NCBI GenBank assembly: GCA_965644315.1
Contig: CBFFRQ010000069.1
Span: 930,001 to 994,000 of the forward strand
DNA from: Caecitellus pseudoparvulus
Taxonomy: Eukaryota; Protista; Bigyra: Bicosoecida
Direction: 5' to 3'
DNA length: 64,000 nt
Shown: positions 29,968 to 38,931 of the stretch, in pieces
Position numbering within the stretch: the stretch's first letter is position 1
Layout of the letters: every line of letters starts with the position of its first letter
Program-made: the position numbers and the translations under genes
The notes under the pieces: generated by a model
The model's database searches: none
The model's input: only the letters and a program-made list of their open reading frames with translations
Told to the model about the DNA's origin: nothing

Positions 29968-31828
29968 ATGGCAGCAGCAGCATCATGCCCTATGGGGGCA
30001 GACTACCGCAAGGGTCGGGAAGACGGCCCCGCGAAGTGCACCTGGTACCCCGGCACGACCGAAGCATCTCCCCATGGCACTGTTCCTGCGTGCGTTGTGC
30101 AGCTGTCTGCTGCGATGCGCGCTTTCAGCTGGGGCGCGTTGCGGTGCGGAACATGCCTCACGGCTCTTTGTGCACAGCGATGACAAGCGGCACACCGTCA
30201 TGGACAGCGCCCTGGACGCGGTGGGGTGGACGCCTCTTGTCAGGCTGAACCGCATCCCTGCAGAGGAGGGCCTTGAGTGTGAGATCCTGGCCAAGTGCGA
30301 GTTCTTCAACGCTGGGGGCTCCGTGAAGGACCGCATCGGCAAGGTAAGTGCAGTGCACTTGAGCTGCACGCCAGGACACCCCCTCACTATCAGCTGCTCA
30401 CCTCGCTGCACAGCGCATGGTTTTGGAAGCCGAGAAGTCAGGGCGCATCAAGCCAGGCGATACATTGATCGAGCCCACCTCTGGCAACACTGGTGCGTCC
30501 CCCCACTGCATTGAAGCGGCTTGCGCCGCTGCCACAGCTTCACGCCCTCTTGCGCAGGCATTGGCATCGCCCTGGCGGCTGCCGTGCGCGGGTACCGCTG
30601 CATCATCACCATGCCTGAGAAGATGTCTCAGGAGAAGGTGGACGTGCTGAAGGCGCTTGGTGCTGAGATCGTGCGCACGCCCACGGAGGCCTCCTTCGAC
30701 TCCCCCGAGTCACACATCTCCGTGGCTCAGCGCCTGAACAAGGAGATCCCCAACTCCCACATCTTGGACCAGTACTCCAACCCCGACAACCCCCTGGCGC
30801 ACTACGAGGGCACGGCTGTGGAGCTCATCGAGCAGGCGGGCGGCCCCGTGGACATGGTGGTGATGGGCACCGGCACTGGTGGCACCCTCACTGGCGTCGC
30901 CCGGCGCTTGAAGGAGGCCTGGCCCAGCGTGAAGATCGTCGGCGTGGACCCCAAGGGTAGCATCCTGGCAGAGCCCGCCTCCCTGAACGAGGAGGGCAAG
31001 CTGGAGCCGTACCTGGTGGAGGGCACCGGGTACGACTTCATCCCCGACGTCCTGGACCGCTCCCTGGTGGACTTCTGGATGAAGACGACTGACGAAGAGT
31101 CCTTCATGGCATCTCGGCGCCTCATCCGCTCCGAGGGCCTGCTGTGTGGTGGCTCCTCCGGCGGCACCCTCTCCGCTGCCATCCGCGCCGCAAAGCAGGC
31201 TGGCCTGAAGAAGGGGGACCGCGTCATCGTCCTCCTCGCCGACTCCATCCGCAACTACCTCTCCAAGTTCGTCAACAACGACTGGATGTGGGGGCACGGC
31301 TTCGTGGACGCGACGCGCGGCATCGGCGCCGCCGACCCGAAGTACACTGGTGACCTCTGGTGGGCCGGCAAGCGCGTGGGGGACCTGTCCTTCTCCACCC
31401 CCTTCACCATCCTGCCGGACGTCTCGTGCGAGGACGCTGTGAAGGTGCTGGCGGGGGAGGGCTTTGACCAGCTGCCGGTCGTCTCCGCCGACAACGAGGT
31501 GCTGGGCGTCGTGACCGAGGGCAACCTGCGGTCCAAGCTCATGCTGTCCCGCCTGCAGCAGAGCGACCCCGTGTCCAAGGCCATGTTCAAGCAGTTCAAG
31601 CGCGTGGCGGCCGACACGCCCCTGCGAGACCTCGCCCGCATCTTCGACTCAGACCACTTCGCCCTCGTCGTCACGTCTCAGCGTGTCTATGGCGGCAAGG
31701 GCGCTGCGGCGGCCACCAAGAGCATCGTCTCAGGCGTCGTCTCCCGCATTGACCTGTTGAAGTTCCTGTCCGAGCACGGGCCCGAGGGGGCGGGTGTCCC
31801 CGTCCCAGCTGCCGCGGCGGAGGAGTAG
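29968..31828 (+). CDS. CBS: Cystathionine beta-synthase with N-terminal heme-binding motif and C-terminal CBS domains
   Basis: KCEFFNAGGSVKDRI (PLP Lys), EPTSGNTG, GTGTGGT, VEGTGYDFIP, DSIRNYLSKF and CBS pair (GFDQLPVV...GVVSRIDLL); three introns, the first at 30090-30177. Confidence 0.96.
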
Positions 31829-31889
31829 GAATGCACGAAGCCGGGCACAAAGCCGGGCACGCCTTTGGCCCCCCTGCACAGGCCTGGCT

Positions 31890-33023
31890 TCATGGGGTGG
31901 AATCCGCCCAAGCGACGGCGCGCTGCATCGCAGCGGTGTGGCCGAGCAGGGCACAGCCCCCGCCCCCATGAACCGCTGCCCACGACCCCTGCTCTGGCCA
32001 GTGCCCTTGCAACTCCGCCACACACTGCAGGAGCTTGGCAGTGTACACTGGGTCAGCTAGAACCCCACACGAGCGGGCCAGTGTGACGGCCCACCTGGCC
32101 ACAGACGCAGGCACGCTGCCGAAAGCGCGCCCTGACGCCGGCCGGTGCGTGAAGACGTTCAGCGCGGAGGCGACGCTGTCAGTGGGGGGAGCGCCTGGTG
32201 CGTGCCAGACCACAGGCCAGCGAGGGGGGCCAACCTCGCGGCTCGCAGCCAGCGCGATTCTCCGCAGGGCGGGGGTGTCGCTGGCCAGCGTGATGCCATG
32301 CAGAGTGGGGGGGGGGGCCGGGCGGCTAGCCAACGCGGCCACCAGGCCCCCCAGGCTGCAGCCCGTGCCGACGTCGAGACAGACATGCGCCCGGCTGCCT
32401 GAAAGCAGGGCCGGTGGAATGCTCTGGACGAGCGATGCTGCGCCTCGGAGGCCCGCGGGCTGCAGGCAGCCCTCCCACACGATGGGCTGGTCTGCCAGCT
32501 GCGGATCGAGACACCCGACGGCCCCGCCCAGCACGCTGGCGGCCTCTCGCGCTACATCCGCGATGAGTGCAGACACTGTGCAGGCAGGGTCTGGTGAGTG
32601 GATGTCGCGGATTCGGGATGGGGGCAGCATCATGTGCAGCAGCAGAGCATTGCCGTGCAGCTGCTTGGGCCGGTGCGTGGAGGTTGCATGCACGATGGCT
32701 TGCTTCCCTGCACAGCGCAGCGCCTGCACAGCCGCCACAACGTTATTCGAGTGCAGACCGCCGACGACATGCCACTCTTGGTGCTGTGACCAGGCAGCTG
32801 AGCGGGCCACCTCTGCGAGCTTCCGGTGCTTGCTGCCTCCAAGCAGGCCACCCACGAAGTCTTCTCTGATCAAGGCCAGCGGGGTTCCTGCAGAGCCCCC
32901 TGCCCAACCCGCACCTAAGTTCTGAATGAAGGACTGAACTTCGTCCCCTGCCCTTGTGTGAATGTGGCCGGGCGGCCACGGGCAAGCCTTCTTGCCCAGT
33001 GAAGCACGCACTGCCGCGAGCAT
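31890..33023 (-). CDS. PLP-dependent D-cysteine desulfhydrase / ACC-deaminase family protein (divergent)
   Basis: IRED...GGSKHRKL (PLP Lys), GGLHSNN, GNALL, DVGTGCS and ADPVYTAK; intronless ORF; ATG at 33023 preferred. Confidence 0.8.
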   Translation of the reverse strand: MLAAVRASLGKKACPWPPGHIHTRAGDEVQSFIQNLGAGWAGGSAGTPLALIREDFVGGLLGGSKHRKLAEVARSAAWSQHQEWHVVGGLHSNNVVAAVQALRCAGKQAIVHATSTHRPKQLHGNALLLHMMLPPSRIRDIHSPDPACTVSALIADVAREAASVLGGAVGCLDPQLADQPIVWEGCLQPAGLRGAASLVQSIPPALLSGSRAHVCLDVGTGCSLGGLVAALASRPAPPPTLHGITLASDTPALRRIALAASREVGPPRWPVVWHAPGAPPTDSVASALNVFTHRPASGRAFGSVPASVARWAVTLARSCGVLADPVYTAKLLQCVAELQGHWPEQGSWAAVHGGGGCALLGHTAAMQRAVAWADSTP

Positions 33024-33323
33024 GCGGAAATTGGTTGCTGAGCCACAGCCACAACGATTCACGCACTGCCGCCGCAGTCAAGAGAATCTAAGGTTCTTCG
33101 AGTTGCGCACAACTTAATTCTATAGTGCGGAAGGTATTGGGTGGGACGCTGTTATGGGGAGCCCTGCCCGCGCTCCTGGTGGCGTGCTAGTTGGGTCGCC
33201 TGTGGTGGGGAATCTGTGCAGCTGGCACTGTCCCGCACCGGGCAAATTCACACAGCCGCCTAACTCGCACCTTGACAACTTGTAGCAACAGTTCTGGAAT
33301 AACATCCGTTCTAGTTGTACGGT
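33024..33323. promoter_or_regulatory. Probable bidirectional promoter between the desulfhydrase-like gene and G6PD-hexokinase
   Basis: 300-bp gap between divergent ATGs with AT-richer patches and a GCGGAAATTG motif at 33024-33033. Confidence 0.5.
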
Positions 33324-36300
33324 ATGGCGGCCACCACGTCGCCAGGGGGCCCTGGGGGCTTTCCCGGTGGGGTGGCCGAGTCTGGAGCAGCAGACCACCT
33401 GACTGCCATTCCTGACACAGACACCTTGTCCATTTTCGTCATCGGCGCGAGCGGAGACCTAGCCAAGAAGAAGACCTTCCCTGCCATCTTTGAGCTGTTC
33501 CAGAATGGCTTCCTGCCCTCCAAGGTGGCTGTCGTGGGCTACTCGCGAAGCTCCATCAGCGACGCGGACTTCCGTGAGCACATTGCAGGGCACTTGACGG
33601 GCGACGCTGAGGACAAGGCAGCCTTCCTGCAGAAGTGCTTCTACCGGAACGGCCAGTATGATTCAGAAGAAGGTTTTGCTACCGCTGTTGCCTTTGCCAA
33701 GGAGATGGAAGCCCCGGAAGGGGCAGGCAGCGCCCATAGGTGCGTGGTGTGGCGCTGGTGGTGCTGCAGTGCAGCAGCTGTGCTCCTGCGCAACCACGCC
33801 GACACGCACCCCGCGCGCGCAGGCTGTTTTACTTCGCCATCCCTCCCTCTGTCTTTGCCCCCATCTCGTCTGTCATCCATGCGGTTGGCCTGGAGTGCTC
33901 TGGCTGGTCCCGCGTTGTTGTGGAGAAGCCCTTTGGCAGGGACAGTGAGACTTCAGCTGAGCTGTCTGCCCAGCTGGCCAAGCACTTCAGTGAAGACCAA
34001 GTGTACCGCATTGATCATTACCTTGGCAAGGAGATGGTGCAGAACCTCATGGTGCTGCGCTTTGCCAATGCCGTCTTTGAGCCGGTGTGGAATCGCCACC
34101 ACATCAACACTGTCACCATCACCTTCAAGGAGCCTTTTGGCACGGAAGGCAGGGGAGGGTACTTTGACAAGGTGGGCATCCTCCGAGACGTCATGCAGAA
34201 TCACTTGCTGCAGGTCATGTCCCTCGTGGCCATGGAGACGCCCGTGTCCCTGGACGCAGAGGCGGTGCGGGACGAGAAGGTCAAGGTGCTGCGGTGCGTG
34301 CCCCCCCTGGACCTGGCCAATGTGGTCCTGGGTCAGTATGGCGCGAATGCCGTTGGCACCAAGCCTGCGTACACCCACGATGCGGGGGTGCCAGATGACT
34401 CCGTCACACCCACCTTCGCTACCGCTGTGCTGAGCGTGAACAATCCCAGGTGGACCGGCGTTCCCTTCATTCTCAAGTGTGGCAAGGCTCTGAACGAGCG
34501 CAAGGCTGAGATCCGCATCCAGTTCAAGCAGCCACCCAACACCCTGTTTGGGTCCATGTCTGGCACCTCTGACAGGTGGGCCCACAACAATGAGCTGGTC
34601 ATCCGCATCCAGCCAAACGAAGCAGTGTACCTGAAGGTCATGTGCAAAATGCCTGGCTTGACTGGCTCCCCGGTAGAGACAGAGCTGAACCTGTCCTTCC
34701 GCTCCCGGTACCCCACGCGGTCTCTGCCAGACGCATACACCCGCCTGCTCCTGGACGTCTTGCGGGGTGACCACTCGCAGTTCGTGCGGAGTGACGAGCT
34801 GGCAGCAGCTTGGAACATCTTCACTCCCCTCCTGCACGAAGTGGAGAGCAAGCGCATTCCACCATTTGTGTACCCGTATGGGTCCCGTGGCCCGCCTGCT
34901 AGCGACAGCCTCATCCGCTCCAAGGGGTACCGGTACGAAGGGTCGTACTCAGGTGCCTGGCGTGCACTGTCTGCCCCTGAGTCTGCAAAGGAAGCGCTCA
35001 TGAGCGTCCACAATGAGTTCAGCCTTCCCACACAGCGCCTGGTGCAGTTGCTGCACAACTTCCGGGAGGAGATGCACGCTGGACTGGCAGGCATGCCGTC
35101 CACGATCAGCATGATCCCCACCTTCATCACGCAACTTCCCAGTGGCGAGGAGACGGGCGAGGTGTGGGCCGTGGACATGGGCGGCACCAACCTCCGCATC
35201 ATCCAATTCCGCATGCTTGGGCGAGGCCGCGTGGAGCAGGTAAAGGTGCACCGCCACACCATTCACAAATCCCTGCAGGAGGGGCCTGGCGTGGACCTCT
35301 TCGCATTCGTTGCCGAAAGCATCCTGGCTGCTGAGGTGCCACCTGACGCCACCCTCGGCTTCACATTCTCCTTCCCTGTGCAGCAGCTGAGCCTGGCTCG
35401 GGGGCGCCTCATGTCCTGGACGAAAGGCTTCTGCGCCTCAGGCGTGGAGGGCATGGAGGTGACGGGACTGCTGGAGCAGGCCCTCGCCGACGTGGGGCTA
35501 GGAGGTGTCAACGTCATCGCACTCGTCAACGACACAGCAGGCACCCTCATGGCACAGCGGTACCGGGACAGCTCCTGCGGCATCGGCGTCATCATTGGCA
35601 CTGGGACGAACGCGGCGTACGTCGAGCACATCGCGAACATTCCCAAGTGGACAGGCGGTGGGGCGGGACCCATGGTCATCAACATGGAGTGGGGTGCCTT
35701 CGGCTCTGGCTCAGGCGGCCGTGCCCTGCTGCCCCTCACTGACATAGACCACCGCGTGGACTCCACGACCCCCAACCCGGGCAAGCAACGCTTTGAAAAG
35801 ATGATCTCGGGGCAGTACCTGGGGGAGCTGATGCGTGTCATTTTGGAAGACCTCCGGGCTGCGGGGCTGCTGTTCGTGCCAGAGCACATCCGCAAAGCCC
35901 GCGCAGCTGCTTCCAAGGGAACTCTCACTTCAGGTTCGTCTGCTGCCGACGTCGCGGCAGCGGTCAGTGGGCCGGGTGCCGCTGCTGTGGATGCGAGTGT
36001 CCGGCTTGGAGATGATGACGTCGTGCCACTGGACTCCCCTCTGCGTGAGCCATGGCGCCTGGGCACGGACATCGTGTCTGCTGTGGAGGCCGATGATACA
36101 GCCACACTGGAAGTCATCCAAGACCTGTTGAAGAAGCACCTGGGCCTGCGTAACAGCACCGTGGAAGACAGGCGTATCGTGAAGGACGTGGGCACGCTCG
36201 TTGCTCAGCGTGCTGCACGTTTGGCAGCTGTCGGCATCGCTGCCGTGGCCATGCAAATGGGCGAGGGCTCTTTGGCGCGGCAGGTGTCGGCTGGCATTGA

Positions 36301-36514
36301 CGGCAGTGTATTCGAAAAGCACCCGTGCTTCAAGCACTGGATTGAGGATGCCCTTACTGAGCTGGGCGTCTCGTGCGACATCCAGCACTCTCCCGATGGC
36401 AGTGGCCTGGGAGCAGCCATCGTGGCTGCAGCTGCTGCGAAGGCCGCCGCCACAACGGAGGCAGCCGTCGCTGCTGCTGCTGCTGCCTCCGAGGCCCCCG
36501 CCTCAGGCAAGTGA
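33324..36514 (+). CDS. Bifunctional glucose-6-phosphate dehydrogenase-hexokinase fusion (one intron, 33740-33822)
   Basis: G6PD motifs GASGDLAKKK, YRIDHYLGKE, RGGYFD..ILRDVMQNHL and YPYGSRGP run in frame into hexokinase motifs DMGGTNLR, LGFTFSFP, WTKGF, VNDT, GTGTN, INMEWG, FEKMISG.YLGE, DGSV and DGSGLGAA. Confidence 0.95.
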
Positions 36515-36533: not shown

Positions 36534-38931
36534 TCACCGTCGCTTGCCGCCTCGCCCGCCCCGCCGGTCAGCCTTGCCTCCCCGAGGCCTGCCACCATAC
36601 AGCATGCCTTTACGGGCGCTCTTGCTGGTCATTGCCCTGCGTTTCTTCCTGTCCTTGCGCACAAAATCGTCCAGCTTGGCCAGGGCCTCTGCAGCGTCTG
36701 GGGCTCTCGGAGGGGCAGTTGTTGGTGCCAAGTTCGGCAAGGCAGATTGCATATCAGCCTCGCCCCCGTCGCCTTGCTCCCCTGCATCGCCAACCCCTGC
36801 TGCGGCAAGCTCCTTCCCGTGCACAGCTGCGTCAAACTGGGCTTGGGAGATCTTCCCAGCCCTCAGCTTGCGCACCAAGCGCTCCTCGGCAGCGAAGTCG
36901 TCCCACTCAGCAAACAGCTTGTCCTGTTGCCCAGTGCGCTTGCGCTTCGTGCCGCGCTTGGTTTGGCCCTTGCCCTTACCCCCACAGCTGCTGGACTCCT
37001 TCTCCCTTGCTTGAGACTCGAGGTCTGCTGCAGCTTCAGCAGCCAATTGCGCTTGGCGTTTGGCCTGCCGGGCAGCCTCGCGCGTCGCGTCTCGGTAAGG
37101 GATGGTAGCCGTGTTGATTGCTGAGCCAAGGATCTCATCAGGGGCAGAGTACTGCACCTTCTTCGCCCCACGAAGGTCCTTCAAGTGCGGAAACTTCAAC
37201 AGGGCAAAGCCCCGCGCAAGCTTGGCCAGATGCAGCTTGGAGAACCGAAAGATGTACTTGCACTGGTGCTCCTGATAGCCCCTCACGAACGCGACAAAGG
37301 CCCGTGTGCCTCGCTCAAGTAGGTCACGGTCCCAGCAGTTCAAATTCATGATGGCAGGAGTAACGTCGGGCACCGTCGCGAGGGTGGCGACCCCCGCAGC
37401 AGCCTCTGCCTGCGTAGAAGCAGCAGTCCCTCGATCTGCCTTGGCCACCCTTGATGCAAGCTCCGGAGGAGCTGTAGGGGACTTGACATCATATGACAAC
37501 ATGTGTTGCAGCGTCGTGTGCGTTGTCGGTACACCGTTCATGTCAAGGAGCGCAATGTAGTCCGCTTCCTGAGGCAGCAACATCACCAAAGCCACGCCAA
37601 GGCGCCCCGCACGGGCCGTCCGGCCCACTCGGTGCACAAAGAAGTCTGGGTCACTAGGAGGGTCGTACTGCACACACCAGTCCAAGTCAGGGATGTCAAT
37701 GCCTCGGGCAGCCACGTCTGTACACACCAACACGCCGCCGTCCGCCTGCATGAACGCCTCGTACACACCGCTGCGTTTCTTTGCTGCCATGCGACCGTGC
37801 AGCCCCCACACTTGTGCAGCCGCTGCAAGTTTTCCAGGCCCCTCTTCCCGTGTGTCCCCCACAGGCACGCCATCTGCACCGACAGTTCCGAGGAGAAGTC
37901 GCTGAAGCTGAGGGGTCAGCACGTCAACCCCCGCGCCTGTCATGGTAAACACAATCCACTTCTCGGAGGCAAAGCGACCAGACTCACGCCTAGAGCGAAT
38001 GAGGTGCACTAGTGCAGACAGCTTGCTGTCCTCCTCGGCGAGCACGTAGAAATTGTGCAGCCCCGTTGGCGTCCGTGCTGGCGTGTGACTGGCCTGTGCG
38101 CCCGACGCAGTGGGGCCCCCCGCGGCAGCCGCGGCACTCGCAGTGGGCGCCTGCACTTGTACTCGCACGACAGCTGGGTTGCGCATGCCTGCACGAGCAA
38201 GCGCTTTGACTTCTGTGGTCTGGGTGGCCGAGAAGAGCCCTGTGCGGCGCTGCTTGGGTAAGGAGCTGAGAATGCGGGTGAGTTCGTCCTTGAAGCCCAT
38301 GGCCAGCAAGGTGTCAGCTTCGTCCAGCACCAAGACGTCCACCGACTTCCAGTTGATGGTCACCCCGCCGGGTACAGCTGCTGCGGCAGCTGCCGCAGCA
38401 GGCCCTGTTTTCTCCATGATGGCAAGCAGGCGCCCCGGGGTCGCCACCACGATATTGCAGCCGCTGGTGACACACGCGTTCACATCGTCGTGCACGCTGC
38501 TCCCACCTGTCAAGAGAATGTCACTCAGGCGGCGCCCATAGCTCGAGCAAGCCACAAACTCTCCCACGACTGTGAACAGCTGCTTCGCCAACTCTCGCGT
38601 TGGAGCAATGATGACTGCCCCCACTTCGTGCGCAGCAAGTGGGACTGGCCTACGCTGCAGCATTTCGAGAATGGGTATGACGAACGCCAGGGTCTTCCCA
38701 CTGCCTGTGCAGGCCTGCGATGGCCATCAGCAGTCGGGGCGATGCGGAAATTGTACACAGGCAAGCCCGCCTCGGCTCTTCGCGTACCTCTGCACAGACA
38801 TCCTTGTGGCTCAAGAACAGTGGAATGGCAGCTCCCTGTACTGGTGTCATGTGGTGGAAATCCTTCTTCCTCACCACTTCAAGCGTCCCTGGCAACAGCG
38901 CAGGCTTGCATGTAGCAAAGGGCACAGCCAT
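36534..38931 (-). CDS. DDX55: ATP-dependent DEAD-box RNA helicase DDX55/Spb4 (one 5' intron)
   Basis: MTPVQ..AIPLFLSHKDV, ACTGSGKTLAF, APTRELA, LDEAD, QRRTGLFSAT, HRVGRTAR and the Spb4-specific AFVAFVRGY..H.C.YIF. Confidence 0.93.

What the first reader, a model, noticed from the sequence alone, without database searches (positions are those of the whole stretch)
33324..36514. G6PD-hexokinase fusion: a single polypeptide linking glucose phosphorylation to NADPH production
Seen: one spliced ORF (about 1,035 aa) with a complete G6PD (NADP site GASGDLAKKK, catalytic RIDHYLGKE and QNH). It is joined with no stop, through a short linker near 34930-34990, to a complete single-domain eukaryotic hexokinase with its ATP- and sugar-binding motifs intact. 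Known: described G6PD fusions are mainly with downstream pentose-phosphate enzymes (6-phosphogluconolactonase in H6PD, Plasmodium and Giardia; 6PGD in some algae). I do not recall a described fusion with the upstream enzyme, and well-studied stramenopiles such as diatoms and oomycetes are reported to rely on glucokinases. Inference: the fusion could channel G6P into the oxidative pentose phosphate pathway instead of glycolysis, and it is a natural one-protein version of the HK/G6PD glucose assay.
Basis: partly seen in the sequence, partly recalled or inferred. Interest (0 to 1): 0.92.

Follow-up and report, generated by a model that had tools for sequence, protein, structure and literature searches.

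The report
Conserved G6PD-hexokinase fusion in heterotrophic stramenopiles
This marine protist makes its only ATP-dependent glucose kinase and its only ordinary glucose-6-phosphate dehydrogenase as one protein, an apparently undescribed fusion also found in Cafeteria and in oil-producing thraustochytrids, where the dehydrogenase half has lost its NADP-binding signature and may act as a regulator.

Summary
The fusion is real: two exons (33324-33739, 33823-36514; 83-nt GT-AG intron) encode 1,035 aa, a complete G6PD followed in frame by a complete hexokinase (HK), with all checked catalytic residues intact. It is not misassembly: independent assemblies hold the same ORF, and about 50 protein clusters share the architecture, including Cafeteria roenbergensis, complete transcriptome ORFs and Hondaea fermentalgiana. 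In the Cafeteria-type clade the junction is nearly fixed in length (50 aa) and is G6PD's own structural-NADP-binding tail. It is the genome's only HK and only canonical G6PD; PGI and PFK are present, so strict channelling 'instead of glycolysis' is unlikely. A tethered, co-regulated bifunctional enzyme is more likely. In the labyrinthulomycete subfamily the G6PD half keeps its G6P and catalytic residues but has lost the coenzyme fingerprint, suggesting a G6P-sensing pseudoenzyme or a changed coenzyme. One or two origins are unresolved. Ten literature searches found no description; databases name it G6PD or HK. The scan noted this stretch before (s1-679076); no note on other DNA of this genome came up.

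The parts
33324..33739 (+). Exon 1: start codon, low-complexity acidic N-terminus (no evident signal or transit peptide), first part of the G6PD Rossmann domain with the GxxGDL fingerprint and R72/Y112 equivalents
33740..33822 (+). 83-nt GT-AG intron inside G6PD_N
   Evidence: homologues continuous across it
33823..36514 (+). Exon 2: rest of G6PD, junction, hexokinase, stop codon
33824..34936 (+). G6PD second half of NAD(P)-binding domain plus full C-terminal domain; K171, D200, H201, Y202, K205, E239, D258, H263, K360, R365, Q395 equivalents all present
   Evidence: residue roles from PMC11448927
34877..35026 (+). Junction: G6PD C-terminal tail with structural-NADP+ residues (R487, Y503, Y507, W509 equivalents) running into the first HK helix; 50 aa between anchors, identical length in 11 of the 17 Cafeteria-type homologues aligned (46-54 in the rest)
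   Evidence: predicted as consecutive helices in a homologue model
35000..35563 (+). Hexokinase_1 (small domain): phosphate-1, sugar-binding and catalytic-Asp motifs intact
35582..36430 (+). Hexokinase_2 (large domain): phosphate-2, glucose-binding Glu, adenosine and connect-2 motifs intact; contains an Ala/Ser-rich insert of about 50 aa at 35885-36031
36431..36514 (+). Ala-rich C-terminal tail and TGA; no canonical PTS1
   Evidence: sequence read directly

Best explanation
A cytosolic bifunctional enzyme: an NADP+-specific G6PD core (probably dimer or tetramer, as for all solved relatives) that carries a single-domain ATP-dependent hexokinase on each subunit's C-terminal tail. HK makes G6P (inferred from intact motifs). 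G6P is released and shared between the tethered G6PD (NADPH, oxidative PPP) and free PGI/PFK (glycolysis). The fusion fixes 1:1 co-expression and proximity of glucose entry and NADPH production, giving at most partial, proximity-type channelling. The tether is the tail that in human G6PD is ordered only when structural NADP+ is bound, so NADP(H) status could also reposition or regulate the kinase (inferred, untested). Shown: the gene, its architecture, residue conservation, copy number and family distribution. Inferred: activity, oligomer state and any coupling.
For: All checked coenzyme, G6P and catalytic G6PD residues and all HK motifs are conserved in the window protein and in essentially all of 22 Cafeteria-type homologues. 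It is the only HK and the only canonical G6PD; the other G6PD-family locus is a 34%-identity divergent gene. No GLK or ROK was found. PGI, two PFK loci, and stand-alone 6PGL and 6PGD are present. Junction length is conserved although the HK halves are only 41% identical on average. Structural-NADP residues R487, Y503 (or W/F), Y507 and W509 are kept in the tether; the human tail is flexible unless NADP+ is bound (PMC11448927). Complete transcriptome-derived ORFs of homologues carry both halves (P0009 TSA, P0273 and P0427 MMETSP).
Against: No activity data and no RNA reads for this species. AlphaFold models of two homologues give pTM 0.54 and 0.52 from shallow alignments, so neither a fixed nor a flexible arrangement is shown. 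An ADP-dependent glucokinase-like gene (N-terminus looks signal-peptide-like) and a reported glycogen phosphorylase (s1-679084, unchecked) could supply G6P independently, which weakens the argument that HK must release its product. D421 of the structural site is N/S/A in most of the clade, so the site may be altered.
Confidence: 0.6

Rival explanations
1. True substrate channelling: the conserved junction holds the two active sites so that G6P passes directly to G6PD, committing imported glucose to NADPH production, while glycolytic G6P comes from ADP-glucokinase or storage glucans.
For: Strict conservation of junction length; consecutive helices at the junction; alternative G6P sources may exist (s1-679084); the genome has several NADPH-oxidase notes (unchecked).
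Against: Both enzymes have open clefts and G6P is a stable, soluble metabolite (established knowledge). HK is the only ATP-dependent glucose kinase found, and PGI/PFK are present. The fusion persists in labyrinthulomycetes after decay of the coenzyme site, which channelling would not explain.
Confidence: 0.12
2. The G6PD half is, or has become, mainly a regulatory G6P/NADP(H) sensor for the kinase, analogous to the non-catalytic N-terminal half of mammalian HK1; catalysis is retained in the Cafeteria-type clade and reduced or lost in labyrinthulomycetes.
For: Labyrinthulomycete fusions keep K171, D200, H201, K205, E239, H263, K360, R365 and Q395 but lose GxxGDL, R72, Y112 and A141. Their G6PD half evolves faster than HK (46% vs 58% identity), the reverse of the Cafeteria-type clade (58% vs 41%). 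The fold is retained. Aurantiochytrium T66 lists HK and G6PDH as separate genes with different expression.
Against: In the window's protein the G6PD half is fully intact and is the only canonical G6PD, so it must be catalytic. R72 replaced by E/D could instead mean a switch to NAD+. That T66's HK gene is the fusion was not checked.
Confidence: 0.2
3. Neutral frozen accident: a chance read-through fusion tolerated and inherited, with no functional coupling.
For: Apparent fission or replacement occurs: P0037 is a stand-alone G6PD with another C-terminal extension inside the fusion clade, and P0345/P0401 are stand-alone HKs sister to the labyrinthulomycete fusions.
Against: Fixed junction length across deeply diverged members; retention of about 500 aa of degenerate G6PD in labyrinthulomycetes.
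Confidence: 0.07
4. Artefact: misassembly or two overlapping genes.
For: One near-identical HK part (P0121, 96%) is annotated alone as Hk2 on a 4.5-kb contig of a Symbiodinium sp. KB8 assembly; no RNA reads were laid here.
Against: One open frame of 924 codons; the same ORF in independent assemblies; about 50 homologous fusions including complete transcripts.
Confidence: 0.01

Closest known systems
G6PD-6PGL bifunctional enzymes (vertebrate H6PD, Plasmodium GluPho, Giardia G6PD::6PGL) and diatom G6PD-6PGD (PMC3148214, PMC11448927)
   Same: G6PD fused in one chain to an enzyme of an adjacent step; G6PD N-terminal as in H6PD and Giardia (orientation from memory).
   Different: The partner is the upstream, G6P-producing kinase, and the shared intermediate is a stable branch-point metabolite, not a labile lactone. 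6PGL and 6PGD are stand-alone genes here.
Cytosolic eukaryotic G6PD (human G6PD, PDB 2bh9/7sni; TIGR00871)
   Same: Fold (on a homologue model), all coenzyme and catalytic residues, and the structural-NADP+ tail; about 60% identity over the G6PD part of exon 2.
   Different: The C-terminal tail continues into a hexokinase; D421 is N.
Single-domain eukaryotic hexokinases and vertebrate 100-kDa HK1-3
   Same: Hexokinase_1 plus Hexokinase_2 with all motifs; about 35% identity. Like HK1, a catalytic C-terminal HK with an N-terminal 50-kDa partner.
   Different: The N-terminal partner is a G6PD, not a duplicated HK.
Cafeteria roenbergensis FNF29_06279 (KAA0148987.1) and Hondaea fermentalgiana 983-aa protein (GCA_002897355.1, BEYU01000059.1)
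   Same: Same four-domain architecture and order; junction 46 and about 45 aa. Auto-named G6PD or hexokinase only.
   Different: Cafeteria is a long-branch member of the same clade. The Hondaea type has a degenerate coenzyme site, and its shared origin with the window's clade is unresolved.
TPI-GAPDH fusion of stramenopiles (PMC6198282)
   Same: Fusion of consecutive carbon-metabolism enzymes in stramenopiles.
   Different: Mitochondrial, lower glycolysis; unrelated enzymes.

Membership tests
NADP+-dependent G6PD (EC 1.1.1.49) | G6PD_N plus G6PD_C domains above family cut-offs | tested here: met
   (zwf 501.6 > 400.6 for exon 2 alone)
NADP+-dependent G6PD (EC 1.1.1.49) | GxxGDL fingerprint and R72 for the 2'-phosphate | tested here: met
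NADP+-dependent G6PD (EC 1.1.1.49) | D200/H263 catalytic dyad; H201, Y202, K205 phosphate binding | tested here: met
   roles from PMC11448927
NADP+-dependent G6PD (EC 1.1.1.49) | Structural NADP+ site (K238, K366, R370, R393, Y401, K403, D421, R487, Y503, W509) | tested here: inconclusive
   All kept except D421 (N); binding not shown
NADP+-dependent G6PD (EC 1.1.1.49) | Measured activity and dimer/tetramer | not testable with these tools
   needs assay
Eukaryotic hexokinase (EC 2.7.1.1) | Hexokinase_1 plus Hexokinase_2, full length | tested here: met
   (profile 3-201/201 and 2-241/242)
Eukaryotic hexokinase (EC 2.7.1.1) | Phosphate-1/2, sugar-binding, catalytic Asp, adenosine and connect motifs | tested here: met
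Eukaryotic hexokinase (EC 2.7.1.1) | Measured ATP-dependent hexose phosphorylation and specificity | not testable with these tools
   needs assay
G6PD-6PGL bifunctional group (H6PD/GluPho) | Fused 6PGL domain | tested here: not met
   No PF01182 in the protein; 6PGL lies on another contig
Channelling bifunctional enzymes | Tunnel or fixed interface; kinetic protection of the intermediate | tested here: inconclusive
   Homologue models pTM 0.52-0.54, no inter-domain information; kinetics not testable
Cafeteria-type (bicosoecid-associated) G6PD-HK fusion clade | Both halves group with the Cafeteria fusion; junction about 50 aa | tested here: met
   G6PD clade SH-aLRT 97-98, HK clade 96 (quick trees, limited outgroups)
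Single Bigyra-wide fusion (Cafeteria type plus labyrinthulomycete type) | Both halves monophyletic across the two subfamilies | tested here: inconclusive
   G6PD: not rejected, p-AU 0.815 (long branch). HK: strict clade borderline p-AU 0.047; with two stand-alone sister HKs included p-AU 0.30

The most novel reading that the evidence does not exclude
An ancient G6PD-HK fusion, inherited by both bicosoecids and labyrinthulomycetes, couples glucose phosphorylation allosterically to NADP(H)/G6P status through G6PD's structural-NADP tail. In thraustochytrids the G6PD half has become a catalytically dead G6P-sensing domain, an independent route to the regulatory-half design of mammalian HK1. It would also be a rare genomic character bearing on the contested monophyly of Bigyra.
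Probability: 0.25. Interest if true: 0.82.

Novelty: new variant of a known kind. Interest (0 to 1): 0.62.

Why it matters
Hexokinase and G6PD sit on either side of the main branch point of sugar metabolism. A natural fusion, kept across many heterotrophic stramenopiles, is a ready system for asking whether tethering biases G6P towards NADPH or gives redox feedback on glucose entry. The degenerate version sits in thraustochytrids used for DHA production, where NADPH supply and G6PD are engineering targets (PMC9866257, PMC6923395) and where automatic annotation calls this protein either G6PD or HK, so expression studies may mislabel it. The distribution bears on Bigyra monophyly, described as recently shaken (PMC11412368). 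As a reagent it would be a one-protein glucose + ATP + NADP+ to NADPH converter.

Tried and rejected
Exon 2 was still read from /data in local alignment and tree scripts, and a short protein motif that overlaps those places was typed as an anchor in two local scripts. The spliced model was searched exon by exon; the joined protein was never built or searched (only exon lengths were summed). The HK-half homologue search was swamped by vertebrate double-domain HKs and did not reveal the donor lineage. The ESM Atlas gave no usable hit. Ten literature searches found no natural fusion; hits for 'hexokinase-G6PD' were assay methods. The careful HK tree did not finish, so quick trees (SH-aLRT only) are reported. 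The EukProt protein g183.t1 (P0029, 212-aa low-complexity linker) could not be assigned to an organism and groups with neither subfamily; it may be an independent fusion or a merged gene model. Rejected: misassembly; a separate HK start near 34997-35000 as the main product; H6PD-type membership; a conserved CBS/cysteine-desulfhydrase/G6PD-HK cluster (other loci have other neighbours). That TSA prefix GECG01 is Halocafeteria seosinensis is from memory and was not confirmed.

Full report
Observation. The sequence shows an ATG at 33324, a GT-AG intron at 33740-33822 and an open exon 2 to the TGA at 36512-36514. The exon lengths (416 + 2692 nt) give 1,035 aa. Searched exon by exon, Pfam finds G6PD_N split by the intron, a full G6PD_C, and full Hexokinase_1 and Hexokinase_2 domains in that order. 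NCBIfam zwf passes its cut-off on exon 2 alone, and PDB hits are human G6PD for residues 1-376 and hexokinases for the rest.

Not an artefact. 921-aa ORFs 99.5-100% identical to exon 2 across the junction occur in independent ENA and Logan assemblies. Complete transcriptome ORFs of homologues carry both halves: EukProt TSA GECG01002386.1 (Halocafeteria, from memory), and MMETSP transcripts P0273 and P0427.

A family. About 34 clusters at 90% identity with G6PD followed by HK came from the first search, including Cafeteria roenbergensis FNF29_06279. A profile search of 1.8 billion representatives and a search with a divergent hit added about 15 more, including Hondaea fermentalgiana. All have G6PD first. 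In quick ML trees the window's G6PD and HK each fall in a supported clade with the Cafeteria and GECG01 fusions and many environmental sequences (97-98 and 96 SH-aLRT), so the host is probably a bicosoecid or a close relative (inference). Oomycete and diatom G6PDs found are not fused to HK and form a separate clade; diatoms lack HK (PMC2173943).

Residues. Against vertebrate numbering, the window protein keeps the coenzyme fingerprint (G38-L43, R72, Y112, A141, P143, K171), the G6P and catalytic set (D200, H201, Y202, K205, E239, D258, H263, K360, R365, Q395) and the structural-NADP set except D421 (roles from PMC11448927). All HK motifs are intact. The distance between fixed anchors on either side of the junction is 50 aa in the window and in 11 of 17 aligned homologues of the clade (46 in the four Cafeteria-like ones, 51 and 54 in two others), although HK halves average only 41% identity. 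Most of this junction is G6PD's own tail with the R487, Y503, Y507 and W509 equivalents; in human G6PD this tail is flexible unless structural NADP+ is bound (PMC11448927). An AlphaFold model of the GECG01 homologue gives both folds (pLDDT 77.8; best PDB matches human G6PD) with helices running through the junction, but pTM 0.54, so relative orientation is not predicted.

Genomic context. This is the only HK locus in the 30.6-Mb genome; no bacterial-type glucokinase or ROK was found (absence in an assembly is not proof). The only other G6PD-family gene is a 34%-identity, H6PD-like divergent locus. PGI, two PFK loci, 6PGL and 6PGD are separate genes, and an ADP-dependent glucokinase-like gene with a signal-peptide-like start exists. 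The fused HK is therefore most likely the cytosolic entry point for free glucose into both glycolysis and the oxidative PPP, which argues against exclusive channelling. The neighbours (CBS, a D-cysteine-desulfhydrase-like gene, an SPB4-like DEAD-box helicase) are not shared by other fusion loci.

A second subfamily. Hondaea, MMETSP and environmental relatives form a separate HK clade (95-97) with junctions of 45-47 aa in most (51 and 71 in the two most degenerate). Their G6PD half keeps most G6P-binding and catalytic residues but has lost GxxGDL, R72, Y112, A141 and the aromatic tail residues, and it evolves faster than HK (46% vs 58% identity; the reverse of 58% vs 41% in the Cafeteria-type clade). 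The fold is retained. Two environmental members (P0314, P0316) have also lost G6P residues. Aurantiochytrium T66 lists HK and G6PDH as separate genes, consistent with a separate working G6PD, though I could not check which is the fusion. This suggests a G6P-binding regulatory pseudoenzyme or a coenzyme switch.

Origin. G6PD halves of the two subfamilies are compatible with one clade (p-AU 0.815; long-branch caveat). HK halves are borderline rejected as a strict clade (p-AU 0.047) but not when two stand-alone HKs that are sister to the labyrinthulomycete group are included (p-AU 0.30); these have no G6PD upstream. A stand-alone G6PD with a different C-terminal extension nests in the Cafeteria-type clade (P0037). 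One origin with fissions and two origins both remain open. P0029 (212-aa linker) groups with neither.

Mechanism. Most likely (0.6): a tethered bifunctional enzyme with both halves active, G6P released and shared, 1:1 co-expression, modest proximity effects, and possibly NADP-dependent coupling through the tail. Rivals: mainly regulatory G6PD half (0.2; likely for labyrinthulomycetes, less so here), true channelling (0.12), neutral fusion (0.07), artefact (0.01).

Known versus new. Described G6PD fusions are with 6PGL or 6PGD (PMC3148214, PMC11448927). A recent survey of eukaryotic central carbon metabolism showed no passage on an HK-G6PD fusion in a term search (PMC11976288), and ten searches of open literature found none; subscription papers were not searched. 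The architecture is present, under single-enzyme names, in public proteomes, so it is unrecognised rather than unsequenced. Verdict: new variant of a known kind (a G6PD fused to a neighbouring pathway enzyme, here the upstream kinase), interest 0.62.

Noticed in passing
P0425, P0273, P0426-P0431, P0314, P0316, P0356 (L017, L024, L025): Labyrinthulomycete-type G6PD-HK fusions with a degenerate coenzyme site but retained G6P-binding residues; candidate pseudoenzyme sensor or NAD+ switch.
   Followed up: partly
L002:457-2616 (G000:C42, minus strand): Highly divergent G6PD-family gene (34% identity, only the start of G6PD_C recognisable, possible signal peptide upstream); H6PD-like but with no 6PGL domain found.
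   Followed up: partly
L011/L012 (G000:C68:697339-699420, minus strand): ADP-dependent glucokinase-like gene with long insertions and a signal-peptide-like N-terminus.
   Followed up: partly
L030:2008-4044 (P0037): Stand-alone G6PD nested in the fusion clade, with a C-terminal extension that looks PH-like by eye (no Pfam hit) in place of hexokinase.
   Followed up: partly
P0029 (EukProt g183.t1): G6PD-HK protein with a 212-aa low-complexity linker that groups with neither subfamily; independent fusion or merged gene model; organism unknown.
   Followed up: partly
P0121 and P0129 (NCBI CAE7679359.1, CAE7915165.1): Proteins labelled Symbiodinium sp. KB8 are 96% identical to the window's HK and cluster with Cafeteria's fusion, respectively; that assembly probably contains two flagellate contaminants.
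   Followed up: no
window 29968-33062: Cystathionine beta-synthase (+) and a divergent D-cysteine desulfhydrase/ACC deaminase-like PLP enzyme (-, 31890-33062), the latter head-to-head with the fusion gene about 260 nt away.
   Followed up: partly
window 36534-38663 (-): SPB4/DDX55-like DEAD-box helicase whose stop lies 20 nt from the fusion's stop (tail-to-tail; 3' UTRs must overlap).
   Followed up: no
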